DNA of 64,000 nucleotides from positions 60,202,001 through 60,266,000 of the forward strand of contig OZ320317.1 of NCBI GenBank assembly GCA_976226885.1, given 5' to 3'. The position numbers and the translations under genes are program-made. Positions 20,581 to 43,699 of this stretch are shown here, piece after piece; the first letter of the stretch is position 1; every line of letters begins with the position of its first letter. Origin of the DNA: Iphione sp. A-MEVVRFRX5. Its lineage: Eukaryota. Below the pieces are notes generated by a model. That model ran no database searches, was not told where the DNA came from, and saw nothing but the letters and a program-made list of their open reading frames with translations.

Positions 20581-20637
20581 ACAAGTAGATGAAATGTTTC
20601 TTAACCCATAACGTGATCTGACTAATTTTTTGGTGAT

Positions 20638-20796
20638 TATTCAGTATACAGAGTAAATATCTGATCCTGCGTGAAAGGACTTCGAGAATGTTTTCTTAAC
20701 CTACAATACGATCTATATTCAGTATACAGAGTAAATATCTGATCCTGCGTGAAAGGACTTCGAGAATGTTTTCTTAACCTACAATACGATCTATAT
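20638..20796. repeat. Perfect 78-bp tandem duplication upstream of polB
   Basis: The unit TCAGTATACAGAGTAAATATCTGATCC...CGATCTATAT starts at 20641 and again at 20719. Confidence 0.92.
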
Positions 20797-20907
20797 AACA
20801 TGATTCAACAGTTATTCAATCCTTTCATTTAGCATTAGTATAGTACTGCTTTCACTTTGAGAGGGATCTTTCAAGACTTCATTTCAATCAATAGAACTTA
20901 AAAGAAG

Positions 20908-26517: not shown

Positions 26518-26572
26518 TGTATAAATTGCTCAGCCGAAGGATTTCTTTTCAGTTTGAAATATATTTTGAAAG

Positions 26573-27197: not shown

Positions 27198-27199
27198 GA

Positions 27200-27622
27200 A
27201 TGAGATTTCCGAAATTCGTAGATGAAGATGTACGTCAGCAGACCTTTGCAGGCTGGAAGCATAGCTTGGACTCAAAGCAAATGGTTGATTGTGGATTCTT
27301 CTATTTAGGAGGACTTGATTCAGTGCAATGCTTTCACTGCGGTGTGCAACTACATTCATGGGATGAAAAAGACAATCCTCTCATAGAACATTTGAAATTT
27401 GCTCCTCACTGTGAATATATATGCAAGAAAGCTCATGTAATTTCATCACTATCAATGGAAATTATGCTAGAAGTCTTGCAACAATCTAAGAAATTACAAC
27501 TGAGAATAGCTGAATTAGAGCAAAAAGTTCATATGAACAATACAGCTGTAGATGAAGTGGATAATACTTTCAGTCTTTTTTCCAACAATAAGAGTAATGT
27601 AGCCAGAGCTGCTGTGCTTTGA
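27200..27622 (+). CDS. Single-BIR inhibitor-of-apoptosis-like protein with a C-terminal coiled coil
   Basis: R..TF..W, GFFY.G..DSVQCFHC...L.SW...DNP..EH.KF.P.C, giving the C-x2-C-x16-H-x6-C zinc ligands. No RING domain. Confidence 0.9.
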   Translation: MRFPKFVDEDVRQQTFAGWKHSLDSKQMVDCGFFYLGGLDSVQCFHCGVQLHSWDEKDNPLIEHLKFAPHCEYICKKAHVISSLSMEIMLEVLQQSKKLQLRIAELEQKVHMNNTAVDEVDNTFSLFSNNKSNVARAAVL

Positions 27623-27721
27623 GGTTAGTTCAACATTATCCTAAGTTGGTTATGAATACCTCAGCAGTCGAAATAGCTGAGCATTTACACTTTAGATACC
27701 GATAGAGATGGAGCTAAGTTT

Positions 27722-28048
27722 GTGGAAAAAATGTCACAGAAACTTAGATCTTCAGCAGACTTTTTCCGGTTATTAATGAATACTGAAAAGGAACAAGCAC
27801 TACAGCTATTGAATTCTATTACTGCTCTACAGACGCTTGCTCTGAGTGAAATAGCTTTGAACCTTACTATTTTACCTCTTTCTCAGAAAACCAAGAAACT
27901 TTTAACTCGATACAAGAGGTTGGTTTCTCTTCTGAGTAAGAAGACTAAATCCATCACAGCTAAAAGAAGTGCTATAAAGAAAAACCGTCGTACTATTCTC
28001 AATATTTTACAAAGTATTAAGCCTGAATTATTGGAATTGGTAAAATGA
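27722..28048 (+). CDS. Basic helical protein resembling a small gene commonly found in Maverick core blocks
   Basis: 108 aa, Lys/Leu-rich (LSEIALN, KKLL..YK.LV.LL.KK). Its stop overlaps the next start (ATGA). Confidence 0.7.
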   Translation: MEKMSQKLRSSADFFRLLMNTEKEQALQLLNSITALQTLALSEIALNLTILPLSQKTKKLLTRYKRLVSLLSKKTKSITAKRSAIKKNRRTILNILQSIKPELLELVK

Positions 28049-28512
28049 AAAAGATGGTACTAATTCCATTTGATCAGTTCTCTCGAAATAAGTTAAATTC
28101 ATCTCAAGAACCAACTGTTTCAATTAACAAGCTCGACACTGATCTAGTGTTACTTCCTTTTGGAAAACAACAAAGGAAAGCAGCTGAGGCTCTTTTAGGA
28201 TATGTGGAAAGGAACATGGACTGGAATAGGAATGGTGAAATCATCATTGATGGTGTGGTTGTTACTGGTAGCCATATCACAGATCTGTTGAAGGATGCCC
28301 TATTCAACTATAGGAACTTTGAACCTGTGGGCTATAAGGAATTTTATCAACATCTTCGTGAAATCCCACTTACATTGATCAGGAATCCCAAACGTCGAGT
28401 TCTGATAGGACGTGGACAATTACCACCGCCTGGAATACCAGTTGAGCAAACTCCTATTGACATCACAAAAGACAACAAAAAAGACTGGAAAACTAACTGG
28501 AAAACATTATGA
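28045..28512 (+). CDS. Maverick hypothetical protein upstream of the integrase
   Basis: 155 aa with W...GE..IDG..V.GSHI.DL and P.G..EF...L..IP..LI.N, recalled as typical of the Maverick gene preceding the integrase. Confidence 0.75.
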   Translation: MKKMVLIPFDQFSRNKLNSSQEPTVSINKLDTDLVLLPFGKQQRKAAEALLGYVERNMDWNRNGEIIIDGVVVTGSHITDLLKDALFNYRNFEPVGYKEFYQHLREIPLTLIRNPKRRVLIGRGQLPPPGIPVEQTPIDITKDNKKDWKTNWKTL

Positions 28513-29606
28513 GTAAAGAGTTAAGTAATATATATTTTGATCCCTCACGATCATCTTCATTCGGTGGGATTAATAAACTATATCAGGAGGCCAAGACTCT
28601 GGGATATAAGAAGAAGGATGTAGAGAACTGGCTTCAACAACAAGATGTCTACACCTTACATAGACGACTTAATCGGAACGTTAAAAGACCGAGGGTAGTA
28701 GTATCCTCAAAAGATCAACAGTGGGATGCGGATACTATGAACATGGTCTCTTTTGCTGAAGAAAATGATGGTTATAGTTATGTTCTAGTATTAATTGATA
28801 TATTTACTCGCTTTGTTTGGACTGTTCCTCTAAAAAAGCTGACAGGTAAAGAAATGGTCGATGCTTTAAAGCAGGTTTTTCCTCAGCACAAACCTAAAAA
28901 ATTAAGAACGGATTCAGGCTCCGAATTTGTTAATAAGGTTGTGAAAAAATATTTGCAGGAAGAAAATGTGTATCATTTTACTACAACTAATCTTGTGAAA
29001 GCTAATTACGCTGAAAGGGTAATTAAGTCTTTGAAAACAAAATTGGTTCGATATATGCATCAGACTCAATCCCATCATTGGCTTGATGTTTTAGCTAAAA
29101 TAACTGATGCATATAACATCACAAAACATAGCTCAATTAAAATGACACCTACACAGGCTAGATCTGTGAATCCTATTATCCTCTGGAAAAATCAATTTAA
29201 AGAGAAAAACCCTAGGATAAGGAAATCTAAACCTAAATCAAAACCAAAACCTGTGTATAAATTTAATATTGATGACCGTGTTCGTCTTGCACGCTATAGA
29301 ACCCCCTTTGAACGAGCTTATGATGAGAAATGGACACATGAAATATTTACTGTTACTAATAGAGCATTACAGCAAGGGATTTCACAATATACTATAAAAT
29401 CCTGGGATAATGAACCTGTGATAGGAAAGTTTTATGAAGAAGAGCTAGAGAAGGTTATTGTTAATGAGGATACTGAGTTTAAAATAGAACGTATTGTAAA
29501 GAAAAAGAAGATGAATGGACAAAATGGTTACGTTGTAAAGTGGTATGGTTGGCCGGAGAAGTATAATTCCTGGGTTCCTATTAGTGATGTCAAAAAGCTT
29601 AAATAG
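28509..29606 (+). CDS. int: Retroviral-like DDE integrase with C-terminal chromodomain
   Basis: QQWDAD (D), LRTDSGSEF (D), NYAERVIK (E). The C-terminal FKIERIVKKKK...YVVKWYGWPEKYNSWVP is a chromodomain. Confidence 0.95.
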   Translation: MSKELSNIYFDPSRSSSFGGINKLYQEAKTLGYKKKDVENWLQQQDVYTLHRRLNRNVKRPRVVVSSKDQQWDADTMNMVSFAEENDGYSYVLVLIDIFTRFVWTVPLKKLTGKEMVDALKQVFPQHKPKKLRTDSGSEFVNKVVKKYLQEENVYHFTTTNLVKANYAERVIKSLKTKLVRYMHQTQSHHWLDVLAKITDAYNITKHSSIKMTPTQARSVNPIILWKNQFKEKNPRIRKSKPKSKPKPVYKFNIDDRVRLARYRTPFERAYDEKWTHEIFTVTNRALQQGISQYTIKSWDNEPVIGKFYEEELEKVIVNEDTEFKIERIVKKKKMNGQNGYVVKWYGWPEKYNSWVPISDVKKLK

Positions 29607-29666
29607 TTCAACTCTTCTCATGTTCATCATTCTGTGTTTTGATTTCAAGCTGTAACAACAAGTAGG

Positions 29667-30050
29667 ATGTATCTCTTTATTAAGCAGAATGATTCTGAGC
29701 TGTTCTATCCTAAAAACACCAGTAGTGATTTCATAGTTGAACTACCACATTCATTAAAATTAAAAGGGGATTGGAGCTGTGCTCTTGTAGAATGTAATAT
29801 AGATAATCCTTCTTCTAAGGAATTATATATTTATTCCGATTTAATAGCATCAAGTGTTGTAAAAGGGAAAACAGCTCCCATTCTCAGAGTAACCAGTGAG
29901 AATGGTGAATTTGTGAATCCATATTACATACCAGTGATTAAGGATTATGTCTTTAGGTTCCGTGTTTGGATTAGAACAGTGGATGGAAAGCTATTTGAAC
30001 AAGATCTTGAAAATTGTCGCCTTGTCTTACATCTTAAAAAGGAGAGCTAA
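29667..30050 (+). CDS. Minor capsid protein (penton, single jelly roll), very compact
   Basis: 127 aa with F.VELP..L.L.G.W.CALVE, LYIYSD.I...V.G...PILR and NPYYIPV. Confidence 0.8.
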   Translation: MYLFIKQNDSELFYPKNTSSDFIVELPHSLKLKGDWSCALVECNIDNPSSKELYIYSDLIASSVVKGKTAPILRVTSENGEFVNPYYIPVIKDYVFRFRVWIRTVDGKLFEQDLENCRLVLHLKKES

Positions 30051-30099
30051 CTCCACTTAGAGTCATTTCAAATCAGACAAGCTAAGAGTCACAAGCAGC

Positions 30100-30471
30100 A
30101 TGAGCTTCATTCCCTATGTTCCAGACTTAGAAGCTTGGAAACAAGTTCCTAACCAAAAGGATAGTAAACCTTTCTATGTTCTTCAGAAGGGAAAGGGAAG
30201 TGATATTAAATTGGTTAGTCCTCAAGAGGGAGTCATTGAGAGAGCAAAGTATAAACTAAGTCGTCAGATAAAAACAACACAACCAAGAACACGTACTCAG
30301 TCGAGATCTAGGAAACGAAGGAGAGGGAACAAGAAGAAATCTATATCTGTATCTCATAAGAAGGTAAAGAGAAAGACAAAGACAAAGACAAAGACAAAGA
30401 AAACCAGTCTGAAAAGAAAACCAACCAAAACATCTAAAAGGAAATCTGGTAGTAAGAGAAGAGGACGATGA
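30100..30471 (+). CDS. Highly basic putative DNA-condensing core protein
   Basis: The C-terminal half is very K/R/S/T-rich, including a KTKTKTK repeat. An LQKGKG motif resembles an adenain cleavage site. The gene sits directly before the major capsid gene. Confidence 0.75.
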   Translation: MSFIPYVPDLEAWKQVPNQKDSKPFYVLQKGKGSDIKLVSPQEGVIERAKYKLSRQIKTTQPRTRTQSRSRKRRRGNKKKSISVSHKKVKRKTKTKTKTKKTSLKRKPTKTSKRKSGSKRRGR

Positions 30472-31799
30472 GTTATATACTGAGTAATGCACAAGAGGGT
30501 TTTGATGATCGCTTAGCCCTCTTCAATATTCCACCTGTAGAAACCGCAGTTCAAGAAATATATTATAAGGATTATCGTCCCATTGGTCAGATTGCTTCTG
30601 ATTCTACTTTGGAATTTGATGTGAGCAATAATTCACCTGATTATATTGTTTTGAATGAAATTTCATTGATAACAACGATTCAATTACACACTGACCAAGA
30701 TAAGCCAATCACCACAGCTCATGATGTGACTCTCATTAATTTTGCCGCTGCTACAATGTTCAGACAACAAGATTTTTATATTCAACAACAGCTAGTTACT
30801 AGCACTATAGGTGCTAACTTTCCTTATAAGGTAATGATAGATGGTTTGCTTGGACAAGGTTTAAATGATCAACTTAGTTGGATGTCTGTAGCCGGCTATA
30901 TGAAAGACACCGCCCTGCTTATGGACGATCATGAAGGAAAATCTAGTGGAAATACAGGTTTAACAGACAGATTTGATAAGACTAAAGCAGGAAAAAAGCC
31001 TGTATTCAAAACAAGACTCTTTATGGATATCTGTCAGCAGAAAAAAATGTTGTTAAACGGCTTACCTTTAAGTATTAAACTATATCCGAGCACAGAGAAA
31101 TTTAGACTGCTCTACAAAACTCAACCAACTACTGCACCTGCTACTACACCAAAGTCCTATAAAGTAAAATTACTAGATGCAAAATTACTTGTTCCTTTTG
31201 CCCGAATTCATCCTGGAATGATCATGGCACAGGGTGACATGTTGAAAAAGGAAATGGCATTGTATCCTTTTACTAGAAGCGAGATAAAGTCCTATAATAT
31301 TCCTAAAGGTAGTTTAAACTGGAGTATGGATAATCTTTTTCAAGATATAATTCCCAAGCGTTTGGTTATGGGTTTCGTTTTAGCAAGTGCTTATACTGGT
31401 GAAAACGAAAAAAATCCTTTTAATTTTCAACACTTTGATGTATACTATCTCGACTTCCAAGTTAATGGGCAGAGTAGTGGAGGTCAAATCCTACAACCAG
31501 ACTACAAAAATCATAATTATGTTTCTGCTTTTGTCAGACTATTTGAGAGTATGCCTCCTGATCAGACAGAACCACCAAATATTACCTATTTAGATTTTAG
31601 AGGGGGATATTGTTTATATGTCTTTGATTTAGAAAAGGGAAAGGATTCTACATATTCAATCCCATTACGAAAGGGTCAAACAAGGCTCTCTGTGAAATTT
31701 GCTAAAGCTCTACCCGAACCCGTTTCAATAATTGTGTATGGAAGTTTTGAGGCTCTTATGAAAGTAGATCAAGCAAGAAATGTTATAATCGAGACCTGA
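30468..31799 (+). CDS. Major capsid protein (double jelly roll)
   Basis: 443 aa with L.LF..PPV...V.E, YIVLN...L, P.R...GFV...AY.G....NPFNFQHF, F..GYCLY.FDL and L.VD..RNV. Confidence 0.92.
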   Translation: MSYILSNAQEGFDDRLALFNIPPVETAVQEIYYKDYRPIGQIASDSTLEFDVSNNSPDYIVLNEISLITTIQLHTDQDKPITTAHDVTLINFAAATMFRQQDFYIQQQLVTSTIGANFPYKVMIDGLLGQGLNDQLSWMSVAGYMKDTALLMDDHEGKSSGNTGLTDRFDKTKAGKKPVFKTRLFMDICQQKKMLLNGLPLSIKLYPSTEKFRLLYKTQPTTAPATTPKSYKVKLLDAKLLVPFARIHPGMIMAQGDMLKKEMALYPFTRSEIKSYNIPKGSLNWSMDNLFQDIIPKRLVMGFVLASAYTGENEKNPFNFQHFDVYYLDFQVNGQSSGGQILQPDYKNHNYVSAFVRLFESMPPDQTEPPNITYLDFRGGYCLYVFDLEKGKDSTYSIPLRKGQTRLSVKFAKALPEPVSIIVYGSFEALMKVDQARNVIIET

Positions 31800-32260
31800 T
31801 GCTCATAAAAATGGTTGTACAGGTACAAAACTCACATTCAGCAATGAACAGTGAACAGATAACTAAATATCTTCTATCAGATACCCATACTTCTAAATAT
31901 TTTAAGGGTGTATTAGCCTATGATGAGATGCCTGAAGAAATTACCTATCCATGTTTGTTCGTTGTTAACACAGATCCATCATTCCGACCAGGAAATCATT
32001 GGGTCTGTGTCTTCTGCGCGGATGTTAATGAATACTTTGATTCTTTAGGGTTTCCACCACTAGAGTTAGAACATTTCCTTTCAAAACAAAGAAAAAATTA
32101 TAAATATAATACTAAAATATTACAGGGTAGCAAAAGTGATGTCTGTGGAGATTATTGTGTTCTCTTTGCTTATTTTCGCTGTAGAGGTTATAGCATGGAA
32201 TATTTTTTATCCCTATTTAGCTCGGATTTAGATTACAATGATAAAATAGTTGAATTATGA
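31799..32260 (+). CDS. Adenain-like cysteine maturation protease
   Basis: VVNTDP...PGNHW (His), EYFDSLG (Asp), LQ.....VCG.YC (Gln, Cys). The real start may be MNSEQI at 31844. Confidence 0.92.
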   Translation: MLIKMVVQVQNSHSAMNSEQITKYLLSDTHTSKYFKGVLAYDEMPEEITYPCLFVVNTDPSFRPGNHWVCVFCADVNEYFDSLGFPPLELEHFLSKQRKNYKYNTKILQGSKSDVCGDYCVLFAYFRCRGYSMEYFLSLFSSDLDYNDKIVEL

Positions 32261-32478
32261 TAAACTTAGAATGAATAGTATCATTATACAACATGTATTC
32301 ATTAGAAATAAAAAAGAAATGTATCCAGCAAAATACTTGTTTATTATATATTCTGTTGAAATCTCTTGAATTCTCACAACCTTTATATGAGGCAAAAAAA
32401 AGTAAAAGAAGCTTTTTGAATGAAATACGCAGGTGATATATATATATATACCTGTGCTCAAAGCAACTGAACGATAAA

Positions 32479-33600
32479 TAATCTTGACTCAGCAAGAGGT
32501 AAATATACTATGGTTATCTTAAACACTCTTTGACTTCAACATAGCTTCATCATGGATCTCGCCTTATTTTTTGTTACGTCTGTGTCATACATTTTAAAAT
32601 GGAATCAAACCAACTACACGAGAGATAATCTTAACTCAGCAAAATGCAAACATACTATGGTTAATATTAAACAGTCTTTGACTTCAACATAGCTTCATCA
32701 TATAACTCACAAAAGAAAACTATATGAGTTTATTCCCCACTTACACATCTCTTTTCAAGAGATAAATATTTATGTAATGAACCTGGCTAACTAGCTGGTT
32801 TTTAACAAGAGAACACATTGTATGAGCCCCATACTTCAAGCTCTACTACTCCTTGGAGGATAATCTACAAGTAAATATTAAAAAAGGGAACACACACTTA
32901 GCAATATATCCACGCTTAACTAGCGAGCCCTGAACCCAACTAACTAGCTAGGTTCTAACAAGAGAACATACGATATGACTGTCACGCTTTAAGCTTGTCT
33001 ACTCCTTTGAGTAGTACAGTAAATTCTTTTTTAAAAGTCTAGGACAGTAATAATAATAGCTGTGCCCAGCTAGCTAGTAGATTATAAAAGGTCTACACGA
33101 GTTCCTTGAGTAAATATCTTGAAAAAGAGAAGACACTCGACATTATCATCACGCTTAACTAGTGAGCCCAGAACCCATCTAACTAGATGGATTCTAACAA
33201 GAGAACATACTGTATGACTGTCACGCTTTAAGGTCTACTCCTTTGAGGAGTACCTCTTTTGATATAAAATATATGTGTGAGCACCACGCTTTAAGGTTTA
33301 CTCAGCTGAGACCCAGCTAGCCAGCTAGCAAACTAATTGCTAGATCTATGTATGTATGTATGACTAACATGCTTCAAGGTCTGTTTAGTTGTCCTTGAGC
33401 AATATTTTCTATATAAGAATGAGCACCACGGTTTAAGGTCGACTCCTTTGAGCAATATCTCTTTTGATATAAAATATATGTGTGAGCACCACGCTTTAAG
33501 TTTTACTCAGCTGAGCCCAGCCAGCCAGCCAGCCAGCTAGCTAGTTAGCTAAAACCTTATAAAAAGTCTACAGCAGTTCTTTAAGTAAATATCTTGAACA
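32479..33600. repeat. Non-coding mosaic of nested imperfect direct repeats inside the Maverick
   Basis: Paired blocks: ~32479-32551 with ~32626-32701, ~32911-32992 with ~33149-33232, and ~33255-33310 with ~33458-33513. CACGCTT(T)AAG and (A)GCTAGCT motifs recur. Confidence 0.85.
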
Positions 33601-33648
33601 TGAGAAGATGGATTCTCCTATGCAAACCTGTAAAGGTTTCGAGCTAAA

Positions 33649-33885
33649 TTAAATGTCCTGAGGAGCTCGATTCCGTAAATTATACCTGTGAGTTCTATTA
33701 CGTAAATTATATCCATTTTTGTGAGGAGTATTATCTGCTCCTGATAGGCGTCGTTGCCGTCGTCTTCTAAGTCCTCTCATATGTTCGTTGTCCGCATCAT
33801 TTACAGCAGCTATTACACGGTGATTTTCTACGTCTTGATATCTCATTCGCGCCGCCATCTCCTCCCTCATTCTGACTGAAAACAT
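33649..33885 (-). CDS. Small basic peptide with tandem YNLR.R chromatin-binding-like motifs
   Basis: 78-aa ORF ending RRRRQRR...NGYNLRNRTHRYNLRNRAPQ. A TTTTCAG acceptor at its 5' end suggests an upstream exon, or a start at Met 33870. Confidence 0.65.
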   Translation of the reverse strand: MFSVRMREEMAARMRYQDVENHRVIAAVNDADNEHMRGLRRRRQRRLSGADNTPHKNGYNLRNRTHRYNLRNRAPQDI

Positions 33886-34523
33886 ATATTCAAAGATAAT
33901 AAATTATATGAATCAAGTCAAATTGTTAACAAGCACCAAAAGAATTGAGTACAGGAGATAATATTTATTGTGAGCCAAAAGAATTGGTTACAGGATATAA
34001 TATTTATTGCTAAATCAAATATATTTCATCTTAGGAATTTTTTATTTAAATAAGTTAAACTGATAACAGCTATTGATAAATTTTGGACTAATTTATAGAA
34101 GTTAGATACATAATAAGAAACTGAGAGTTCAAGAAATTCAGATATAAAAAAGATTTAAGTGTATGAAAATTAAGATGGGAAAAAAAAAGAAAATTCGTGC
34201 CTTACACCTATGTCTCGCATTTATGTCAGGAAGCAGATCGATCTCGTCATCTACTCCGTTGTAAACACTACATGAAATATAATTAATCTCTTGTGAATTT
34301 TGTGTGAATTCACACTACATAGAGATCATAGACGGAAGCAAATCGTTTACTCCAAATAAAGTTACTTTAAACAAAGAAACAATACTGATAAGTTATGTAA
34401 CCTTTAAAATGGAAGCAAATCAACTACTTCAGACAGAAGTTATATTAAATGACCCTAGTACACTTTTTTGCTAAGTTAAGTAGATATTTACGTTTATTAT
34501 TAATATTTGGTATTCATCAATCT

Positions 34524-35330
34524 TTATGAAGATACATACTGATTCTGATATGCATGTCCATGTTCGGGCGCTCCATCAAGAGGTAGCTCCATCGCGCCCA
34601 ATCCTTCAATCTGCCCATTCAACGCACCCAGCATCATCGCCTCCTGGATATTTCTTCTATTTTTTTTACAATAGCGATGGACATAAACTAGAGCTGCAAT
34701 AATCATGATGAAAATCACAGCCAGTCCAACATATAACAAAATCCATACTTTGTTTTCAATTGGACCCATTCCATTATCCGCATGCTCTGATGTCGTAGTT
34801 CTTGACTTAGCTGGACTCAATCGAGGGTTAATATCATCTGTATCAAGCTCATCAGTATTACGATGAATACTTTCCACCAAACTGCCCTCGCCGTCTGGAG
34901 CTGGGCCAACAGTGTCATAATATTCAGTGTCATGATCATCATCATCAGTAAAGTCATTCGGAACAAGCTCCCTCTCACTAGAGGAGGAAGAGGACTCGCA
35001 ATCTGATTTGATTGCAAGTTGCTCGTGGCTTTGAATTCTGCTGCAGGGAATATCCGTATTTCGTACATCAATGAGCAGAGTTTGAGGAAATAATTTGTAA
35101 ACCAGTGTCAAGTTCAATGTGTCCAGTTTCGAATAGCGGAAATCCAAATACCTGAATCCGTAAAACTCCTTTCCCGCTACAAGCAGCGAGCGAATCAAGC
35201 TAGTTATAGGAATACTCCGGCAAAGTAGTCGTGAACCCTTGCATCTGCATCTTTCACACAAGTCATTAGACTGAACAGATGAAATTAAAATAACACAAAC
35301 TAAAGAAGAGAAAACGAAAAATTTTGCCAT
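34524..35330 (-). CDS. Type I membrane protein 1: signal peptide, short LRR module, acidic Ser/Thr stalk, TM, Tyr-containing tail
   Basis: LRRNT-like CERCRC.GSRLLC, LRR-like LDFRYSKLDTL and LIDVRNT.IPC, TM VWILLYVGLAVIFIMIIAALVYV followed by a basic stop-transfer segment. Confidence 0.85.
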   Translation of the reverse strand: MAKFFVFSSLVCVILISSVQSNDLCERCRCKGSRLLCRSIPITSLIRSLLVAGKEFYGFRYLDFRYSKLDTLNLTLVYKLFPQTLLIDVRNTDIPCSRIQSHEQLAIKSDCESSSSSSERELVPNDFTDDDDHDTEYYDTVGPAPDGEGSLVESIHRNTDELDTDDINPRLSPAKSRTTTSEHADNGMGPIENKVWILLYVGLAVIFIMIIAALVYVHRYCKKNRRNIQEAMMLGALNGQIEGLGAMELPLDGAPEHGHAYQNQYVSS

Positions 35331-35747
35331 AATGGCTGCGTTGCAAAGTCACTGTAAAGGGATCAGGTTAGTTTCCCATTTTTTTCGCTAGCGAGCTAGC
35401 GAGCGAATATACTGTTTCAGTGGTGATGATCAGTTCTATATTATACATAAATAATGATATGATATGATATGATAAGATAAGTGAGGGGTTAAATAGTAAA
35501 ACAGTGATTTGTTTTCGTATTTGTTATTGATTCAATTCACTAGATGGCGCCCTAGTTCATAAAAAACTGATTTAGTTTTGTATCTCAGTAGATGGCATGC
35601 TAGTACATAAAACGCTGCCCTGAGCTATGTTTTAAAGGACTAGCACTGGCTTATTTAACTTTTTTGAGGACAGAGTCCCTTCCTGTATACGTCTCGTTGT
35701 AAACACTAGTCTCTATAATGACTAGAAAAAAAAAATCATAAGAGAAA

Positions 35748-36404
35748 ATGGTCACTTCTCCCGAAAGAATCAAAACTCCTAATATAATATCATATTATTG
35801 GTTGAGGGAATTTGAAGACGAATCTAAACACGGTGTTCGCTTTCTACATGAATCAGTAGGAGAGAGAAATGAATTTCCACCTAATTCCATAATATTACAA
35901 TATTATCGTTGGTGTTTAAGAGACTATGAAATGAATATTATATATGTTAGTGAGGATGTTTTCCTTTTAAGAGAGTTGTGTGATATCATTGGAAAAAGAG
36001 CTTATAATTCAGCTATGTTCAGGGGCTTCATCTGTGAAAGTGATAAGATATACTTTATTCAACAGAAACCACATATTTATGGAATTATTACTGAAATAGC
36101 TAATCGACCAGATAGGGTGGATGTTATGAAGAAGGTATACACTTATTTGTTGCATCTTGAATTCAGCAAATTAATTAGCTTAGACTTCATCATAGAAAAT
36201 CTATTTGAGGAATATGCAATATACTGTCATCTTCAAATAAACTACAAACGACTGGCGAATGCTAGTTCCTATATGGCTAATTTCTTCCAAGTTGAAAGCT
36301 ATTTCAGTTTTAAAGAAACTACAGATTTCCTCAATAATCAAAATCCTGCGTCCACACTGCGTGACGTAGCATCACAAAAAATTTATGAATTTACATTCAT
36401 CTAA
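35748..36404 (+). CDS. Unknown family, paralogue P1 (218 aa)
   Basis: Shares YYRWCLRD...IYVS.D.FLLR.LC...G.RAYN, MK.VY.Y.L, RLA....Y and Q.P...IYEF with P2 and P3. Confidence 0.85.
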   Translation: MVTSPERIKTPNIISYYWLREFEDESKHGVRFLHESVGERNEFPPNSIILQYYRWCLRDYEMNIIYVSEDVFLLRELCDIIGKRAYNSAMFRGFICESDKIYFIQQKPHIYGIITEIANRPDRVDVMKKVYTYLLHLEFSKLISLDFIIENLFEEYAIYCHLQINYKRLANASSYMANFFQVESYFSFKETTDFLNNQNPASTLRDVASQKIYEFTFI

Positions 36405-36728
36405 ATACAACTCTTTGAGTATGTTATCTTAGGAATGTATTTATGCAATATCATGCAGGCAATGACCTAGCAACGAATAGATTCGTGAGGATGAACACGA
36501 TGAATTACTTGAACCACTAGAACAGTACGATTAACCTGATTTTATAAATTCCATATTGCGCAAATGTTGACGTATCTGAATATATTAGCCTTGTAAATAT
36601 CTAGAACCAATGGTTGAAGCGAACTCATCCTTTTAAATAACTGCTATGGACGTTTTCTCTCTCAGAGGCGCAGCTGACTTCTGAGAGCATTTTCCCGATA
36701 CCTATTTTTTCCCCAAATTTTAAACGAG

Positions 36729-37791
36729 ATGGAGAGGTTAAGTTCAAAAGTACAGGTTAAGGAAGAGGACGGATTCTTGAAAATTGTACGCCGAAAATAT
36801 GATAAAGTCCGCAATGTTGCGGTTCCCATGGAGGTTATTTCATGGGCATTAGAAAACCAGAAATTTATCCTGGAAGCAAAGCTGTCGTACGCAGGAGACA
36901 AGATGATGGAAACAATAGTTCCAGATTGGAAGGTGATGGTCTCGTTCTTCCTAAACGAATTTTACATTGGTTTCAACAAATATATCAATGGAGAAAGAAG
37001 CGGGTAAGTTAATTATATTTATATATTAATATTATTATTTATCTATACATCAACTTTAAATCTAATTAAATGCCTCACGTTAACCACAATATCTTCATCA
37101 TCATTAAATCTTATATCATCATTTCCTCCATTTCAGAATGGATTCCATAAATCTTCATGTTGATGAATTCAAAAAATTGGTTGAAATTAATGAAATAGAG
37201 AAGGGAATGCCCCCACAGAAGAAAATGCGACGAACATATCAACGTTGGCAGTATGAAGTTGTCGACTACAAGGGCGTCAGTTTGATCAAATCTAATTCAT
37301 GGTTCCTATCGCAAAAAAGAGCAAGAGAAGAGGCTATGGTTGTAAAGGCTAGCTTTGAAGAAAAAAGTGATATCAAAGATGATACCACACTTAAGGCAGA
37401 CATAGAAATGTTTTGTCAAGAACTACTTTTACCCTCTGCTAGTCAGATCGCTGAGAAAGTTTATAGCTATATTTTGAGGAAGGAATTTGAAAGCAGAGTC
37501 AATCAGCTATATAGCGGTTCTAACTATACTGTTCTACAAATAGATGAAAGTAGCTCAGGTGAATTAGTCAAGTATCCGGAACATCTATTCAGAGAACATG
37601 CAAAGCCCTGTCATTTGAGAATTTCACTACCAAGATTAATGGAAGGTTGTAATATAATTACTCGTTATTACGGATTTGATACACTTGTTACACATATGGA
37701 AGCATTGCAGGTGCTCAAAAGAGCACAACCTTTTGAAGTGTTGAAAGCAAATAAGCCTGATTTTGAAAATGAATATGCACAGCTTGATTAA
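36729..37791 (+). CDS. Spliced PC4-like ssDNA-binding domain fused to divergent paralogue P4 (~309 aa)
   Basis: Exons 36729-37003 and 37137-37791; the intron 37004-37136 is GTAAGT...TTTCAG, phase 2, and joins in frame. The join creates VMVSFFLNEFYIGFNKYINGERSG|MDSINLHVDEFKKL, which is PC4-like. The C-terminal part has KVYSYIL..EF and RLMEGC..I..YYG. Confidence 0.72.
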
Positions 37792-38118
37792 CTTTGAGTA
37801 TGATGATGTAATACTTTTTATTATCTATAAAACTTATTACAATGCAACATTAACTAGCTTATAGTTTTGGAATCTAATTCATATCAATTAGCCACTACTA
37901 CAATATATACTTATAATAATGATAGATTTAATTGTAGCATATTATACACTGCTTCAAAGCTCGGTAAAATTGTAGCTGTTCTTTGTTCACTTATTCATAT
38001 AGTTATACTTCTGTTTCAAGCGTATAACATAGACTTATAATGATAAACTTGACTTGTAGTATATACTGATTTAAAGCTCAATAAAAAAAAATTGTTCTTT
38101 CTTCACTTATTCTTGTGG

Positions 38119-39051
38119 TTATACTTCTGTTTCAAGCATATTTGTTTCAATCATATTATATATGTCATTATAAAATCCATAATAATCAACTACTGCAACT
38201 CTCTTCTTACGAAATTTTCTCACAAGAATAACCGCTATTAAAACTATTATTATTATAAACAATAATGGACATAACACCCAAAGAACAATATTCACAATCG
38301 GAATCCTATTGGTTCCATCTGTACTTCTTCCAGTTGAGTTCATAAAAGTTGTACCGACGCCCTCTTCAGTGATAGTAGTCGCAGTTGAGTTGAAATACGG
38401 TTTACTACCACCCTCCTCAGTGATAGTAAAAGTTGTGAACGACCCAGTTGACCTTGTTGTAGTTGTGTCACGCTCAGTCAGATAACTGAACGTTGAAGAA
38501 GCGCTCGAAGATACAATAGTAGCAGTAGTAGTGGGTTTAATAGAAGATGAGTTAGTACGTAATGTAATATTAGCAAAAGAAGAAGTGATGAATGCTGTGG
38601 TTGTGGACTTCGTAGTAGATCTGCTTTCTGAAGTAGTAGTAGTAGAAAGTAAATCTGTACTAGGTTGACTATATCCATATGGAGAAGAAGAAGAAGAAGA
38701 AGAGGAGAAATATGTTGAGGCCGTAGATGCTGACTCACGCTCACAGTTCCATAGCAAAGTAAAGTTCACTGTTAATGGAATAGATTCGCAGGCAAAGTTA
38801 CTCCACTGATTCCGTATATCGAGTAGTTGCAATACCTGGAACTTTTCAATTATATCCATTCGTAGTTGTGACATTTTACACCAGCGCCAATCGAGATGAG
38901 TGTACTGGCGGTTAATTGGGATGAAAAGTGACTGCGGATCCACTCTTCTGCATGTAATAGTGTCCCATACACACGAACAGATTTGGCAAATACTGTTTTG
39001 TGCATATCCATGTGATATGAGTATAAGCAGGAGAATAATGCATTTTTCCAT
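38119..39051 (-). CDS. Type I membrane protein 2: signal peptide, short LRR module, mucin-like Ser/Thr stalk, TM, tail ending ETEV
   Basis: CQICSC.WDTITC, LDWRWC.MSQL, LLDIRNQ..NFAC, ~140-aa S/T-rich stalk, TM IVLWVLCPLLFIIIIVLIAVILV followed by RKFRKKR. Confidence 0.87.
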   Translation of the reverse strand: MEKCIILLLILISHGYAQNSICQICSCVWDTITCRRVDPQSLFIPINRQYTHLDWRWCKMSQLRMDIIEKFQVLQLLDIRNQWSNFACESIPLTVNFTLLWNCERESASTASTYFSSSSSSSSPYGYSQPSTDLLSTTTTSESRSTTKSTTTAFITSSFANITLRTNSSSIKPTTTATIVSSSASSTFSYLTERDTTTTRSTGSFTTFTITEEGGSKPYFNSTATTITEEGVGTTFMNSTGRSTDGTNRIPIVNIVLWVLCPLLFIIIIVLIAVILVRKFRKKRVAVVDYYGFYNDIYNMIETNMLETEV

Positions 39052-39323
39052 ATCTAAGTAAAATATTCAGAACAGGAGACACGAAGTGTGCACGACGAGT
39101 CCCGGCAGACAAATAAGAAGGGTCACAAGTCAGGTTCGCGATCAGTCAGCTCACTTAATGAGAGTCATAAATCATTGAGAAAAGGGGGTCAGTAAATAAA
39201 GGGTTAGAAGTCGGGTTTAGACTTGATGCTCTAAGAAACGCGCGGAACAGCGAACAAGATAGGGATAGACCTAAAATATGGATAAATAACTAACACAAAA
39301 TCTTTAATAGAAACTCTTTATTT

Positions 39324-40106
39324 TCACATAGTAATTAGTTCATATATTGTTGTACTACTTTCATTTAGACCTGCAGAATATATAGGATCCTGTGCTTTAA
39401 GAAATTCCTCAACTTCTGTAAAAGTGAAAGTTTCACTCAATCCATAAAGCATAGAGATATATGCACAACCACTAGCCAATCGATTAACAGTTATGCGAGT
39501 ATGAGAAGACATAAGACAAATTTTATAATTCTTACTATTTATAACCATTCTAGTTCTTGTTCTCTGATACTCATCATCCAACATATAATAATAAACCATT
39601 TTCATAATACTCTCCTTAGTTACTGTTGGAGGATATTCAGTGATGACTCCAAAGTCTTCAATCTTGTCAGCTGTAAGTCGTGAACTAGGCTTTGATTGCT
39701 CATATACCCTCCCCAAAACCTTAACACAATTATATGCTCTTCTACCCATAATGGTACATAAATCTTTCAAGAGAAATATGTCATTACTAATGTAAACAAC
39801 ATTATGATTCCGATCCCGCAGATACCAGCGATAGTGAGCTGGAGGTGAAACTTTTGGGTATACATTTTGCACTCCACCAAAACCAGCTCTTAAATTCATA
39901 TGATGTTTATCTTCTTCAATTTCCTTTATATAACACTTAGTGAAATAGTCTATTTCATCAGTACTATCATGAGATCCATCCAGGTCACCGTCAGCTTGAT
40001 GATCCGCAGGCAAACTTGATTCATAGGCAATATGATCGAGCTCCATGTTATGTTCAAAACCTGGCGATGTTGACTGTACCCACTCCACTCGTAAACTAAG
40101 CTTCAT
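39324..40106 (-). CDS. Unknown family, paralogue P2 (260 aa)
   Basis: HYRWYLRD...VYISNDIFLLKDLC.IMGRRAYN, IMKMVYYYML, RLASGCAY, QDP...IYEL. Confidence 0.85.
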   Translation of the reverse strand: MKLSLRVEWVQSTSPGFEHNMELDHIAYESSLPADHQADGDLDGSHDSTDEIDYFTKCYIKEIEEDKHHMNLRAGFGGVQNVYPKVSPPAHYRWYLRDRNHNVVYISNDIFLLKDLCTIMGRRAYNCVKVLGRVYEQSKPSSRLTADKIEDFGVITEYPPTVTKESIMKMVYYYMLDDEYQRTRTRMVINSKNYKICLMSSHTRITVNRLASGCAYISMLYGLSETFTFTEVEEFLKAQDPIYSAGLNESSTTIYELITM

Positions 40107-40141
40107 ATAGTCAGACAGAGTTATATATTCCTGAAAGATAT

Positions 40142-40792
40142 TTATAACATTCTAAATTCATAAATGTTACTTAATACCTCTACTGAATGCGTCACAATTG
40201 GATTTTGAGCAGTTAGAAACGCACACACCTTCTCACAATCATAGTATGAATCTAAACAATATAATGTTGCCACATATGCACATGCATTTGCTAAGCGTCT
40301 AGGAGTTATTTTAGAATGAATCTTCGATAACAAAAAATCAATATTTTGCAGATCTACAAGCACTCTCTCTTTAAGTCTTTCAAAATCATTATTCAAAATG
40401 TAAATGTAAACCTCTTTCATAATTTGTTCTTTAGTCGGTATTTCTTTGAAAGACGTTATTATATCATAAAAATGTGGAACTCCTTCTAATACCTCCTGCT
40501 TAAATCTATCATGAACCCAGCCATTAAAACAGGCGGTATTAAATGCTCTCCGCCCCATAGCATTACATAGATCCCGCATCAGAAATATTTCATCACTAAC
40601 ATATATAGTTTTCAAGTTAACATCTTTTAGACACCAATGATAATATTTCACCATCTCATCTTCATTTGAATATTCATCTATCACCCCCGAGCTGCCATCA
40701 TCATCATTCCCCATATCATACCTATCCTCCTCCACTTCCCTATAATAATATTCCATATAATAATTGAATTCATTTTCTTCTTCTTCCTCCAT
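40142..40792 (-). CDS. Unknown family, paralogue P3 (first ATG at 40792; the ORF track starts at TTG 40828)
   Basis: YYHWCLKD...IYVSDEIFLMRDLC.AMGRRAFN, IMKEVYIYIL, RLANACAY, QNP...IYEF; acidic N-terminus. Confidence 0.85.
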   Translation of the reverse strand: MEEEEENEFNYYMEYYYREVEEDRYDMGNDDDGSSGVIDEYSNEDEMVKYYHWCLKDVNLKTIYVSDEIFLMRDLCNAMGRRAFNTACFNGWVHDRFKQEVLEGVPHFYDIITSFKEIPTKEQIMKEVYIYILNNDFERLKERVLVDLQNIDFLLSKIHSKITPRRLANACAYVATLYCLDSYYDCEKVCAFLTAQNPIVTHSVEVLSNIYEFRML

Positions 40793-40826
40793 CACACTTT
40801 TATATTTACCAAATGATACATTATAC

Positions 40827-41120
40827 AAAAAGTCGGCCCCCGTGGTTCAATGTCCTTTCTATACTAGCTTCCACCTGTTCTCCTCCCATCTTCAACATTG
40901 AAGTCAACGTCATAACTCCATGTTGGATATCCTAGCTGTCCAACATGAACGACAATCGTCTCAGCCTGCTCTGTCAGGATGCACAACCAGACGGCTGAGC
41001 CAGGATAAACACCGCTACCTATTTTCTTCACGTTGGCCGGTGAGGGAGTCGAACCCTGCTCATCACTGTCTCGTATCTGTTGGACGGAGCGCCCTGCGCT
41101 CCGAACCACGGGGACCGGCT
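40827..41120 (-). ncRNA. Candidate RNA polymerase III transcript (~290 nt), VA-RNA/EBER-like
   Basis: A-box-like GTGGTTCGGAGCG at about +12 and a B box GGTTCGACTCC at 41055-41045. The 5' end (41119-41103) pairs with the 3' end (40848-40832) over 17 bp, with one mismatch and one G-U, immediately before TTTTT. Confidence 0.65.
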
Positions 41121-41560
41121 GAAAGTGCAGTAACAAATCACTTGGTGGTTGCTATGCAGAGACACTAACCCCATCTGGTGTTTCTCCCTGGTAGTTAGAG
41201 GGATTTCTACCCTTCGTAAACAATAGATGGCGGTAAAAACGATACAGGTAAGAAAATTATACATACTTGCAAAGATATGGAAAATTAATCAATTTCTTTC
41301 ATCTTCAAGATATTAATCTATTCTCATGGGAAAAACTACAGTAGAATTAATACATACCACAATCAAACGGCGATTTCACAGCCCCATTCACTTGAATTGA
41401 GCCTTGTATTCAGGAAACACCATTTCAAGCTATGTCCAGGGTTTATGAGATTTCATCTTCATCACCGATAAAAAATAACTCTTGCCTAAAACATGGCAAA
41501 CAGAGTATACAATAACCGCATCAGGCTGAAAGAGCTCAGCTTGGTCGGATCCTAGCCGTC

Positions 41561-41764
41561 ACTGTCTCGTATCTGTTGTACGAGACAGTTGGATCCAGAT
41601 CTCTTTACAGAGGTCACCTACTTAACCAAAATTAACTTCTTTCACTCTGTTCTTCACGTAGGCTAGTCTAAAGTCATGTCTGCCTTCCCTCCCTTACGTC
41701 TCATTTATAAATCATTCCACCTCTTTCCTTCCCTTAATTCCATACTTGGACTCGTCCAAGTATG
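41561..41764. repeat. Right subterminal hairpins
   Basis: 41561-41589 is ACTGTCTCGTA-7-TACGAGACAGT (11-bp stem). 41741-41764 is CATACTTGGAC-2-GTCCAAGTATG (11-bp stem). Confidence 0.85.
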
Positions 41765-41866
41765 TCACTTTCACGCAACGTATGAGCTACGTACATTCGG
41801 TTCAAGCTATGGCTCGCGTTCACAACCAGGGGTGGGCTCACTCTCTCAGAGTCAATATATGCAAAG

Positions 41867-41960
41867 ACAGATCCCACTGGGAGGGGCTTAGGGTGGGGGG
41901 GAAAATGTTTGATCTTATTAGCATAGTCAACACACTATTCTCTGCTTACTATTTACTACT
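41867..41960 (-). repeat. Right terminal inverted repeat (94 bp)
   Basis: Reverse complement of the left TIR. It ends ...TATTTACTACT, followed by the TSD GTGGTG. Confidence 0.95.
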
Positions 41961-43699
41961 GTGGTGACACATGGCTCTCACTGCTAGAAGAAGTAGTAAG
42001 GGTGTGGTGTTTCTTTTTAAAGACTGAGCTGGCAAAAGGAGCTGTTACATCACAGTAGCAGAGGATTCTGGGGGAATTCGAGGCTACTGGGGGTTTTGCC
42101 CAGCTGCCAGTCAGGAGGCAGGGCCAGGGCAACCATTCACTTGTGGGTGGCTTGCAGGGCGGTGCTCATCACTCGAGCTTGGTTAGTCTGGCTGCTTCCT
42201 CCCTGCTGCAGCATGGTTGGTAGGGTGGGAGGGGGCTCTGACATATACTCAGCCAGTCTGACCGCTAACTGACTGCTGGAGGGTGCGTCTAGGGTGGGAG
42301 GGGGCTCTGACACATGGGTGTGCATGGATACATGTGCTGTCATTACCCCTAGCAGTGAGTCCCAGTGTATGCGCGGAGGTCTCTTGAAGTGACTAAATCT
42401 ACTCTACTGCCTCTGCTACCACCACTGGCCTCTATCAAGTATGGCATCGAACCAGACCACACCGCTACAAGCTCCACAGGCCCTGGTGCCAGAGCCTCTG
42501 ACACCCCTAGCACCGGCATCCCCACAGCTAACTCCAGTGCCACCGGTAGGCCCTGAGGCCCCTGAGCCAGCTCCAGTTGGGCCGCCACCAGCCTTTTCAC
42601 AAGGGGTTCCCCAGGAACTCCTTAACAGCATCGTTGCGGACATTCAGAGGTCAGACATTATGTCCAAAAGGCTGGATGGCATCGAATATATGATGGTCAA
42701 GATGATGGCCTTGGTGGAGGACCTGAAACAGCAGGCCAAGAACCTATCACATACACAGCCCCAGCTGACCTCTGTGCAACCACCAGCCCCACAGCCCCAA
42801 GCAGTGCTGGCTTCAGTCCCACAGATGGCAGGTCCTTCACCGTCCAACCAGCCTCTGTCTGGAAGACCTCCAGAATCAATGCCACGACCCAGGAGGTCCC
42901 GCTACAGGGACTTGCTGACCACCCAGTCTCCCTCCTTCAGGATCCCCTCCTCACTGTCGTTGACCTCCAGACAGCCTACAGGCTCTTTCCAGTGTGTTCC
43001 ATGGACTGAAACCTCGTGGCCATCCAGCTCCCAGTAGACACCTACGTGTACCTGGCCCTCCTATTCGGGCTGAGAAAGAGTGCCTACTACATGCAAAAGA
43101 TCACAGAATTCATATAGTTAGGGATCTAGGGGCAGACGGTGTGAAGGCCCTCATGTACTTGATGACATCATCCTCCAGGCCTCCACTGCGACCGTGGCCC
43201 AGCAGGCCGTACAGGCCACCCTTACCCTCCTGTCCTCACTAGAGTTTAAGGTGGCCAAGGATCAGTGCCAGCATCTGGCTACCAGGGCCACTTGGCTTGG
43301 CATCTAGGTGGACACAACAGATAGGACTCTCTCCCTCCCAGAGGAGAAGCTCCGTGTCTACCGCTTCCAGTTCACTGAGGCATCTGTGCTCGCCTCTATG
43401 TCTCTTCGGGCCTTCCAGTCACTCATTGGGAAGATGAACCATGTTGGTCATCCGGCTGGCACGGCTGTACATGGCCCACCTCCCGGAGTTTCTCCATGTG
43501 GCCCCTTGGGGTCCCATCCCCCCTGGACTACACAGTGCGAGCTGACCTCTGCTGGCTCTCCTACCTCTCAAAACACTTCAGTGGGGTCTCCTATGTATAG
43601 GTTAGAGACCAGTTGGGGCTGTCTATCTGAGTTAGAAAGCGAGGCCATTAGGCCGAGACTTCTAATTCAGATAGAACCAGCCGGTATCTAACCAACTTA

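What the first reader, a model, noticed from the sequence alone, without database searches (positions are those of the whole stretch)
40827..41120. Candidate VA-RNA-like Pol III non-coding RNA in a Maverick
Seen, minus strand: the 5' end GCCGGTCCCCGTGGTTC pairs with GAACCACGGGGGCCGAC about 270 nt downstream (17 bp, one mismatch, one G-U), directly followed by TTTTT. There is an A-box-like CCGTGGTTCGG at about +10 and a canonical B box GGTTCGACTCC at +66. Internal hairpins lie at 41086-41102 (GGAGCGC/GCGCTCC), 40960-40999 and 40919-40947. The first ~85 nt can alternatively close a tRNA-like stem (GCCGGT/ACCGGC) with a T-loop. Established: adenovirus VA RNAs and EBV EBERs are Pol III RNAs with internal A/B boxes and a terminal stem ending at an oligo-U terminator, and VA RNAs antagonise PKR and Dicer; MHV68 TMERs are tRNA-like leaders followed by pre-miRNA hairpins. 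Inference: an RNAi or innate-immunity decoy, or a miRNA precursor. I am not aware of such an RNA described in Polintons.
Basis: partly seen in the sequence, partly recalled or inferred. Interest (0 to 1): 0.87.

Follow-up and report, generated by a model that had tools for sequence, protein, structure and literature searches.

The report
tRNA-like Pol III-type module in Maverick
A 294-base GC-rich stretch near one end of a young Maverick (virus-like transposon) really does look like a tRNA-derived RNA polymerase III gene with paired ends, but its nearest relatives lack it and nothing supports a VA-RNA-like immune decoy.

Summary
The quoted features are present. Minus strand 41120-40827 has an 18-position terminal stem (16 Watson-Crick pairs, 1 G-U, 1 mismatch), a perfect B box (41055-41045) inside a T-arm plus acceptor minihelix, and one T5 run at the 3' end. 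It lies in the right subterminal spacer of a 22.4-kb Maverick with perfect 94-nt TIRs and a 6-bp TSD.

The weak points:
- No tRNA or Rfam family is detected.
- The fold signal is the same on both strands (z -5.15 and -5.11).
- Inverted repeats of this size occur about 2 per shuffled window.
- One quoted hairpin is no better than shuffles, and local hairpins (11-13 bp) are too short for pre-miRNAs.
- The four complete copies of the closest family found (63% protein identity) and all other relatives fetched have no homologue, B box, tRNA or structured GC island there.

Covariation could not be tested.

Best reading: a lineage-specific, tRNA-derived (SINE-like) type-2 Pol III module, probably a passenger. 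The VA-like decoy reading is unsupported but not excluded. Interest is moderate to low.

The parts
40827..41120 (-). Candidate unit: GC-rich island (53% GC; first 90 nt 66%) with tRNA-like head, about 200-nt body, terminal stem and T5
41103..41120 (-). 5' arm of the terminal stem. It overlaps the acceptor-like 5' strand and the A-box-like stretch.
40831..40848 (-). 3' arm of the terminal stem
41106..41116 (-). Best A-box-like match (unit positions +5 to +15), 6 of 9 specified positions
   Evidence: consensus from PMC12193147
41045..41055 (-). B box, 9 of 9 specified positions; forms the 5' half and loop of a T-arm-like hairpin
   Evidence: consensus
41035..41120 (-). tRNA-like head: 6-bp acceptor-like stem, 7-bp/3-nt-loop hairpin, T-arm-like hairpin. 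Not a cloverleaf.
40827..40831 (-). T5 run (Pol III terminator-like); the only T run of 4 or more in the unit
40919..40947 (-). Perfect 11-bp hairpin in the body
   Evidence: z -3.4
41544..41582 (-). Partial paralogue of unit positions 35-73 (includes half of the B box, which is degenerate here). In this copy it forms the loop and 3' arm of a perfect 11-bp hairpin.
40793..41866 (-). Right subterminal non-coding spacer between the right TIR and the first inward-facing gene. It is 1,074 bp here and 464 bp in the closest relatives.
40142..40792 (-). 216-aa ORFan gene directly downstream of the unit; one of four paralogues in the right arm
19585..41960 (.). Maverick/Polinton-type element, 22,376 bp, about 35% GC
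19588..19681 (.). Left terminal inverted repeat (100% complementary to the right one)
41867..41960 (.). Right terminal inverted repeat
19579..19584 (.). Target-site duplication GTGGTG, left copy
   Evidence: read
41961..41966 (.). Target-site duplication GTGGTG, right copy
   Evidence: read
21588..26517 (+). Large replication-gene region (polymerase-position ORF through the NADAR domain). It is a single ORF of about 1,700 aa in relatives L019-L021. Here it is in 5 ORF pieces, so 4 interruptions. Whether these are stops, frameshifts or short introns was not resolved.
28509..29606 (+). rve integrase with C-terminal chromodomain
26573..27109 (+). A32-like packaging ATPase

Best explanation
The 294-bp island is a tRNA-derived, SINE-like module with the layout of a type-2 RNA polymerase III transcription unit. 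This particular Maverick lineage carries it in its right subterminal spacer.

Shown:
- A perfect B box sits in a T-arm-like hairpin, followed at once by an acceptor-like 3' strand that pairs with the first bases of the unit.
- A weak A-like box lies near the 5' end.
- There is no internal T4 run, and a T5 follows directly after an 18-position stem that joins the two ends.
- GC content is far above the surrounding element.
- The unit is absent from every relative that could be fetched.

Inferred:
- TFIIIC would bind the B box, and Pol III would start a few bases upstream of 41120 and stop in the T5.
- This would give a structured RNA of about 295-305 nt.
- The head may first fold tRNA-like. The far more stable end-to-end stem (MFE -119 against -87 kcal/mol) would then take over.

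I take it to be a passenger: a host tRNA-like or SINE-like sequence picked up or evolved in situ, rather than a conserved Maverick gene. No immune-decoy function is indicated. Whether it came from a mobile SINE or arose locally is unresolved.
For: - The B box scores 9 of 9 and is expected 0.07 times per window.
- The same 20-mer (T arm plus acceptor 3' strand) is found at the 3' ends of genuine phage tRNA genes, which shows its tRNA character.
- The acceptor-like 6-bp stem is in exact tRNA register.
- The best A-like match, 6 of 9, is at +5. T5 is the only T run of 4 or more.
- The terminal stem has pair probabilities of about 1.0.
- The fold z-score is -5.15.
- The GC island peaks at 0.59 against 0.30-0.41 around it.
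- The spacer is about 600 bp longer than in the sister family, whose spacer is neither GC-rich nor structured (z +0.9).
- The 90-aa ORF across the unit has no homologue among 1.84 billion proteins.
- In the held literature, A-B spacing well beyond the tRNA norm is reported as tolerated.
Against: - Neither ARAGORN nor Rfam (tRNA included) recognises the head. ARAGORN calls it only at 80% threshold, together with spurious calls, and not reproducibly.
- The A box is weak.
- Structure is equally strong on the plus strand (z -5.11). It therefore does not point to an RNA of the minus strand.
- There is no homologue, B box or tRNA in 4 complete sister copies or in 9 other relatives' loci.
- For a SINE there is no target-site duplication and no A-rich or simple-repeat tail. 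There is also no second copy in the 41.6 kb of host flank.
- A 39-nt piece is duplicated 496 bp upstream inside the same spacer, which fits local evolution better than a clean insertion.
- There are no expression data.
Confidence: 0.4

Rival explanations
1. DNA-level cis element. The island is one of several palindrome-rich blocks in the two subterminal spacers of this element. These may be promoter, replication or packaging architecture, or a TFIIIC-bound boundary using the B box. It would act as double-stranded DNA, not as an RNA.
For: - The fold signal is strand-symmetric (-5.15 and -5.11).
- The left subterminal spacer holds an even stronger near-perfect 52-nt palindrome and a 20-nt palindrome.
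- The right spacer has further perfect 11-bp palindromes at 41561-41589 and 41741-41764.
- The stem has only one G-U pair.
Against: - Palindromes do not explain the exact T-arm/acceptor geometry with a 9 of 9 B box, nor the T5 placed directly after the stem.
- The sister family's spacer has no such structure, so it is not a conserved requirement.
Confidence: 0.2
2. One reading: a Maverick-encoded, VA-RNA-like Pol III non-coding RNA that blunts dsRNA sensing or RNAi, or a TMER-like precursor of small RNAs.
For: - The unit has a Pol III-type layout.
- The A-like box lies in the terminal stem, as in VA RNA (PMC7589676).
- The 18-position terminal stem stacks on a 7-bp hairpin and could bind dsRNA-binding proteins.
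- The element is young and carries other host-interaction domains: BIR and NADAR.
Against: - No Rfam match.
- The length is 294 nt, not about 160.
- There is no long apical stem, and the GGGU-ACCC pair is absent.
- Local hairpins are 11-13 bp, too short for about 22-nt duplexes.
- The unit is absent from all relatives.
- No covariation could be tested.
- The held library has no report of such an RNA in Polintons.
Confidence: 0.1
3. Part of a Pol II transcript of the right arm: a leader exon or an intron of the mRNAs for the inward-facing genes. The unit starts exactly at a 3' splice-site-like TTTCAG.
For: - TTTCAG ends at the unit's 5' edge (41124-41119, minus strand) and occurs again at 41531.
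- The same hexamer lies within 27 nt upstream of 4 of 22 ORF starts, where about 0.9 is expected.
- A GTATGT donor-like site lies about 145 nt upstream (read).
Against: - These are splice signals only; no transcript evidence exists.
- A leader of -119 kcal/mol would hinder scanning.
- This reading does not explain the B box and acceptor geometry.
- Most genes of the element are packed and intronless.
Confidence: 0.1
4. A chance constellation picked out of 64 kb by eye, or a nested MITE.
For: - Inverted repeats of this size are expected 2.2 times per shuffled window.
- T runs are common in this AT-rich element.
- An 18-bp inverted repeat at both ends is what a MITE has.
Against: - The joint occurrence of the B box (0.07 per window), an acceptor complement in register, the GC island and an overall z of -5 is very unlikely by chance.
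- For a MITE, no target-site duplication of any usual kind flanks the repeat (read), and no other copy was seen.
Confidence: 0.1

Closest known systems
tRNA-derived SINEs (type-2 Pol III retroposons)
   Same: - A tRNA-related head with internal A and B boxes, followed by an unrelated body.
- A total length of about 300 bp.
- Presence in one lineage and absence in relatives.
- A GC contrast with the surrounding sequence.
   Different: - No target-site duplication, and no A-rich or simple-repeat tail.
- The two ends are complementary over 18 positions.
- The T5 terminator is part of the unit.
- No second copy was seen in the sequence available.
- The head is too degenerate for tRNA detectors.
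Adenovirus VA RNA I/II
   Same: - Carried by a virus-like element of the adenovirus-Polinton kinship.
- Internal box A in a terminal stem, and a box B.
- An oligo-T terminator.
- The 5' and 3' ends are paired (features from PMC7589676).
   Different: - Almost twice the length.
- No apical stem or central domain.
- No GGGU-ACCC pair.
- No covariance-model match.
- Not conserved among relatives.
- No functional evidence.
Murid gammaherpesvirus 68 TMERs (tRNA-like leader plus pre-miRNA hairpins)
   Same: A tRNA-like Pol III head followed by hairpins and a T run (architecture as summarised in PMC12498455).
   Different: - Hairpin arms are only 11-13 bp.
- The head is not a cloverleaf.
- The ends pair with each other, which TMERs are not described as doing.
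Isolated B-box / extra-TFIIIC sites acting as chromatin boundaries (from my own knowledge, not tested)
   Same: A perfect B box in non-coding DNA next to genes, in an element whose integrase carries a chromodomain.
   Different: Such sites need no A box, terminator or RNA structure. Nothing here shows TFIIIC binding.

Membership tests
Adenovirus VA RNA | Sequence and structure homology to the family (covariance model) | tested here: not met
   No Rfam family matches at gathering score. None does at E up to 10 over 40500-41500.
Adenovirus VA RNA | Intragenic box A and box B | tested here: inconclusive
   Box B scores 9 of 9. Box A scores at best 6 of 9, at +5. Sequence only; promoter activity was not tested.
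Adenovirus VA RNA | About 160 nt, with terminal stem, central domain and long apical stem | tested here: not met
   The unit is 294 nt. A terminal stem is present, but the interior is a multi-branch of short hairpins.
Adenovirus VA RNA | Conserved complementary GGGU-ACCC tetranucleotides in the central domain (PMC7589676) | tested here: not met
   GGGT occurs once (position 65). ACCC is absent.
Adenovirus VA RNA | Run of four or more U at the 3' end | tested here: met
   T5 at 40831-40827.
Adenovirus VA RNA | Binds and blocks PKR; substrate and competitor of Dicer and Exportin 5 | not testable with these tools
   Needs biochemical or expression data.
tRNA | Cloverleaf with D, anticodon and T arms | tested here: not met
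   ARAGORN finds 0 genes. There is no Rfam tRNA hit even at E up to 10. Relaxed ARAGORN calls are not reproducible. Only the acceptor and T arm are tRNA-like.
TMER-like tRNA-miRNA precursor | Pre-miRNA hairpins with about two helical turns after the tRNA-like head | tested here: not met
   The longest local hairpin arms are 11-13 bp. The hairpin at 40960-40999 is no better than shuffles.
tRNA-derived SINE | tRNA-related head with A and B boxes | tested here: inconclusive
   The B box and the acceptor/T-arm are convincing. The A box and the rest of the head are degenerate.
tRNA-derived SINE | Target-site duplication and an A-rich or simple-repeat 3' tail | tested here: not met
   There is no flanking direct repeat better than a 7 of 8 AT-rich match that is offset from both ends. 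The unit ends in T5 with no tail (read).
tRNA-derived SINE | Many dispersed copies in the host genome | not testable with these tools
   The host genome is not in any searchable collection. There is no second copy in the window, in the relatives' loci, or in IMG/VR and JGI metagenomes beyond chance 20-mers.
MITE | Terminal inverted repeats flanked by a target-site duplication | tested here: not met
   An 18-bp inverted repeat is present. No TA, TTA/TAA, TTAA or 8-bp duplication flanks it (read).
Maverick/Polinton (the context) | Long element with terminal inverted repeats and a 5-6-bp target-site duplication | tested here: met
   The element is 22,376 bp. The 94-nt TIRs are 100% complementary. 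GTGGTG lies on both sides.
Maverick/Polinton (the context) | Retrovirus-like (rve) integrase | tested here: met
   PF00665 plus a chromodomain, at 28509-29606.
Maverick/Polinton (the context) | [quoted passage not shown] | tested here: inconclusive
   - Pfam and PDB sequence searches give no polymerase hit.
- The ORF is syntenic with, and 41-59% identical to, the large ORFs of the relatives.
- It is weakly similar (E 5e-6, 116 aa) to the PF03175-positive polymerase of the distant relative L028.
Maverick/Polinton (the context) | Packaging ATPase, adenovirus-type protease, capsid proteins | tested here: inconclusive
   - The A32-like ATPase has E 2e-5.
- The adenovirus endoprotease match has only E 0.034.
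- The conserved 443-aa protein has 83 homologues in marine invertebrate assemblies, but I did not show a capsid fold.

The most novel reading that the evidence does not exclude
A Maverick/Polinton carries its own RNA polymerase III gene for an RNA of about 300 nt with a double-stranded terminal stem. The RNA would act on host dsRNA-sensing or small-RNA pathways, as the VA RNAs of the related adenoviruses do. This would be an independent, tRNA-derived invention in an invertebrate virus-like element.
Probability: 0.1. Interest if true: 0.8.

Novelty: new member of a known kind. Interest (0 to 1): 0.35.

Why it matters
Mavericks/Polintons are viewed as kin of adenoviruses (PMC4028283). In the held literature I found no report of a Pol III-transcribed RNA in any of them. 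If this unit is transcribed and kept by selection, it would be the first such RNA. It would also be a natural case of a virus-like element recruiting a tRNA-type promoter for a structured RNA, as adenoviruses, gammaherpesviruses and BLV have done.

On present evidence it is a single, unconserved copy. It may be only a tRNA-derived passenger or a DNA palindrome. Its value is as a cheap, well-defined target for existing or new RNA sequencing data from the host.

Tried and rejected
- **Known RNA family.** Rfam gave nothing at gathering score on the window, at E up to 10 on the region, or at gathering score on 7 relatives' loci. I considered SRP, RNase P and Y-like RNAs because of the size and paired ends. 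I dropped them for lack of any model hit.
- **True tRNA or intron-bearing tRNA.** ARAGORN at default and relaxed settings gives no stable call.
- **Homologues by neighbouring gene.** The 216-aa ORF is not on record and has no homologues.
- **Homologues by DNA.** BLAST against 13 relatives' loci found nothing. The 20-mer and 17-mer scans of IMG/VR and JGI metagenomes returned only phage tRNA 3' ends or matches limited to the seed. Strings from the unit searched in papers matched only unrelated primers.
- **Covariation.** Not possible. No second copy exists in any accessible data, so no covariance model was built.
- **Coding exon.** The 90-aa ORF across the unit has no hit among 1.84 billion representatives.
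- **GTCCAA/TTGGAC as a repeated binding motif.** Not enriched.
- **Short direct repeats D2-D10 in the spacer.** At chance level; only the 39-nt D1 is significant.
- **Fold scans.** Two sliding-window fold scans timed out. A coarser one ran.
- **Polymerase identity.** Pfam and PDB sequence or profile searches returned only zinc fingers from the relatives' N-termini.

Full report
**Context**

The window holds a 22,376-bp element at 19585-41960.
- It has 94-nt terminal inverted repeats that are 100% complementary.
- It has a 6-bp target-site duplication, GTGGTG, at 19579-19584 and 41961-41966 (read).
- Its GC content is about 35%, against 40-54% in the flanks.
- It encodes an rve integrase with a chromodomain and a NADAR domain. 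It also encodes an A32-like ATPase, a BIR domain and a weak adenovirus-protease match.
- The 443-aa ORF at 30468-31799 has 83 homologues, unnamed or 'hypothetical', from marine invertebrate assemblies and metagenomes.
- The contigs that encode these homologues show the same gene order. One distant relative carries a Pfam-recognised protein-primed polymerase at the same position. That polymerase is weakly similar to the window's 835-aa ORF.
- I accept 'Maverick/Polinton'. The perfect TIRs suggest a recent insertion.
- The large replication gene is one ORF in L019-L021. Here it is in five ORF pieces, so four interruptions, whose nature I did not resolve.
- The host is an invertebrate. A flanking iduronate-2-sulfatase-like gene has its best named hits in sponges, molluscs and annelids at about 45-50% identity.

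**The observation**

On the minus strand the unit runs from 41120 to 40827.
- The two ends pair over 18 positions: 16 Watson-Crick pairs, one G-U and one mismatch. Pair probabilities are 0.985-1.0.
- T5 follows directly and is the only T run of four or more in the unit.
- GGTTCGACTCC at 41055-41045 meets the published B-box consensus at all nine specified positions. It is the only such site in the element. It is expected 0.07 times per window.
- The B box forms a T-arm-like hairpin that is followed at once by ACCGGC, which pairs with positions 2-7 of the unit. This is the tRNA register.
- The same 20-mer occurs at the 3' ends of real tRNA genes in phage contigs.
- The rest of the head is not a cloverleaf. 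ARAGORN and Rfam find nothing. Relaxed ARAGORN calls are unstable.
- Of the quoted internal hairpins, 41102-41086 (7 bp) and 40947-40919 (11 bp, z -3.4) are real. The hairpin at 40960-40999 is no better than shuffles.

**Is it more than chance?**

- The whole unit folds at -119.1 kcal/mol, z -5.15. The plus strand gives z -5.11. The signal therefore comes from DNA-level inverted repeats and does not identify an RNA strand.
- Inverted repeats of 17 nt with up to two mismatches within 40-400 nt occur 12 times in the window and 2.2 times in shuffles. The terminal stem by itself proves nothing.
- In a coarse scan the unit is the second most structured 294-nt block of the element. The first is the left subterminal spacer, which holds a near-perfect 52-nt palindrome.
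- What is not chance is the tRNA-type minihelix with a perfect B box, set in a GC island. The island is 53% GC overall, 66% in the head, with a peak of 0.59, against 0.30-0.41 around it.

**Relatives**

- The gene next to the unit has no homologues. I therefore anchored on the 443-aa ORF.
- The closest family, at 63% identity, is present as four copies more than 99.8% alike in one assembly (L011-L014). Their right ends are fully covered.
- In that family the spacer between the last inward-facing gene and the TIR is 464 bp. It is not GC-rich and not structured, with z +0.9.
- The L011-L014 copies and L015-L021 have no BLAST similarity to 40700-42000 and no strict B box. Those loci plus L027 and L028 have no tRNA. 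L011, L016, L019-L021, L027 and L028 have no Rfam family.
- The right-arm gene block is inverted here relative to that family. The window also has two extra paralogues of an ORFan family.
- The unit is therefore lineage-specific. At 63% protein identity, non-coding homology would be lost anyway. Covariation could not be tested and the boundaries of an insertion could not be defined.
- The host genome itself is not in any searchable collection.

**Inside the spacer**

Positions 35-73 of the unit, including the first half of the B box, have a paralogue 496 bp upstream at 41582-41544. The local alignment scores 46, against 19.4 +/- 2.0 in shuffles. There the B-box part is degenerate, and the segment is the loop and 3' arm of a perfect 11-bp hairpin. 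This points to local duplication and reshuffling within the spacer rather than one clean foreign insertion.

**What it most likely is**

I read it as a tRNA-derived, SINE-like module with the layout of a type-2 Pol III unit, carried by this Maverick lineage (confidence 0.4).
- Shown: the motifs, their geometry, the GC island and the absence from relatives.
- Inferred: TFIIIC and Pol III use, a product of about 300 nt, and a switch from a tRNA-like head to the end-to-end stem (-87 against -119 kcal/mol).

**Rivals**

- A DNA-level palindromic cis element or TFIIIC boundary (0.2).
- A leader exon or intron of right-arm mRNAs (0.1). The unit starts at a TTTCAG, a hexamer mildly enriched just upstream of ORF starts.
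- Chance, or a MITE (0.1).

The features that define VA RNA, taken from PMC7589676, are mostly not met: size, apical stem and central domain, the GGGU-ACCC pair and a model match. Local hairpins of 11-13 bp cannot give about 22-nt duplexes. Only the terminal stem could.

**Literature**

In the held library I found no report of Pol III transcripts, VA-like RNAs or tRNA-like genes in Polintons or Mavericks.

  - The IUPAC B-box patterns were typed before I had a source. The consensus forms were later taken from PMC12193147 and PMC12498455.

Noticed in passing
window 52692-54619: A 126-bp tandem repeat of about 15 copies lies in the host flank. Many of its copies carry a B-box-like 10-mer, e.g. 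GGTTCAAGTC, on the plus strand. It may be a tRNA- or SINE-derived satellite. It has no similarity to the candidate.
   Followed up: partly
window 19953-20050 and 20638-20796: The left subterminal spacer holds a near-perfect 52-nt palindrome, a perfect 20-nt palindrome and a perfect 78-bp x2 tandem repeat. It gives the strongest fold z-score in the element on both strands.
   Followed up: partly
window 41124-41119, 41531-41526 and 40136-40131 (minus strand); also upstream of 25091, 26573 and 37138 (plus strand): TTTCAG, a 3' splice-site-like hexamer, lies within 27 nt upstream of 4 of 22 ORF starts, where about 0.9 is expected. It also sits exactly at the 5' edge of the candidate. This might reflect leader splicing or trans-splicing of the element's mRNAs.
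   Followed up: partly
window 35748-40792: Four paralogues of one ORFan family lie at 35748-36404, 37138-37791, 39324-40106 and 40142-40792. The block from 35748 to 39051 is inverted relative to the closest family, L011-L014.
   Followed up: partly
window 38119-39051 (minus strand): A 310-aa protein with a signal-like N-terminus, a Ser/Thr-rich stalk and a C-terminal membrane span; it looks like a surface glycoprotein. It has a weak TMEM154 match. Its N-terminal domain is conserved in relatives.
   Followed up: no
window 27200-27622 and 25411-26517: The element carries a BIR (inhibitor-of-apoptosis) domain protein and a NADAR domain. Both are shared with relatives.
   Followed up: no
L028 11831-12325; L027 18717-19748: A distant relative locus (L028) holds a TATA-binding-protein domain gene just downstream of the conserved core genes. 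Another locus (L027) holds a deoxynucleoside-kinase domain gene about 7 kb further on; I did not check that it lies inside the element.
   Followed up: no
window 32261-34523: About 2.2 kb in the middle of the element has no ORF of 80 aa or more on the plus strand; the only one listed is a 92-aa minus-strand ORF at its left edge. The relatives show a similar gap. It could hold a spliced or very divergent gene.
   Followed up: no
L014 19670-21326: In one sister copy a Ty3/gypsy-type retrotransposon polyprotein lies about 900 bp beyond the right end of the element.
   Followed up: no
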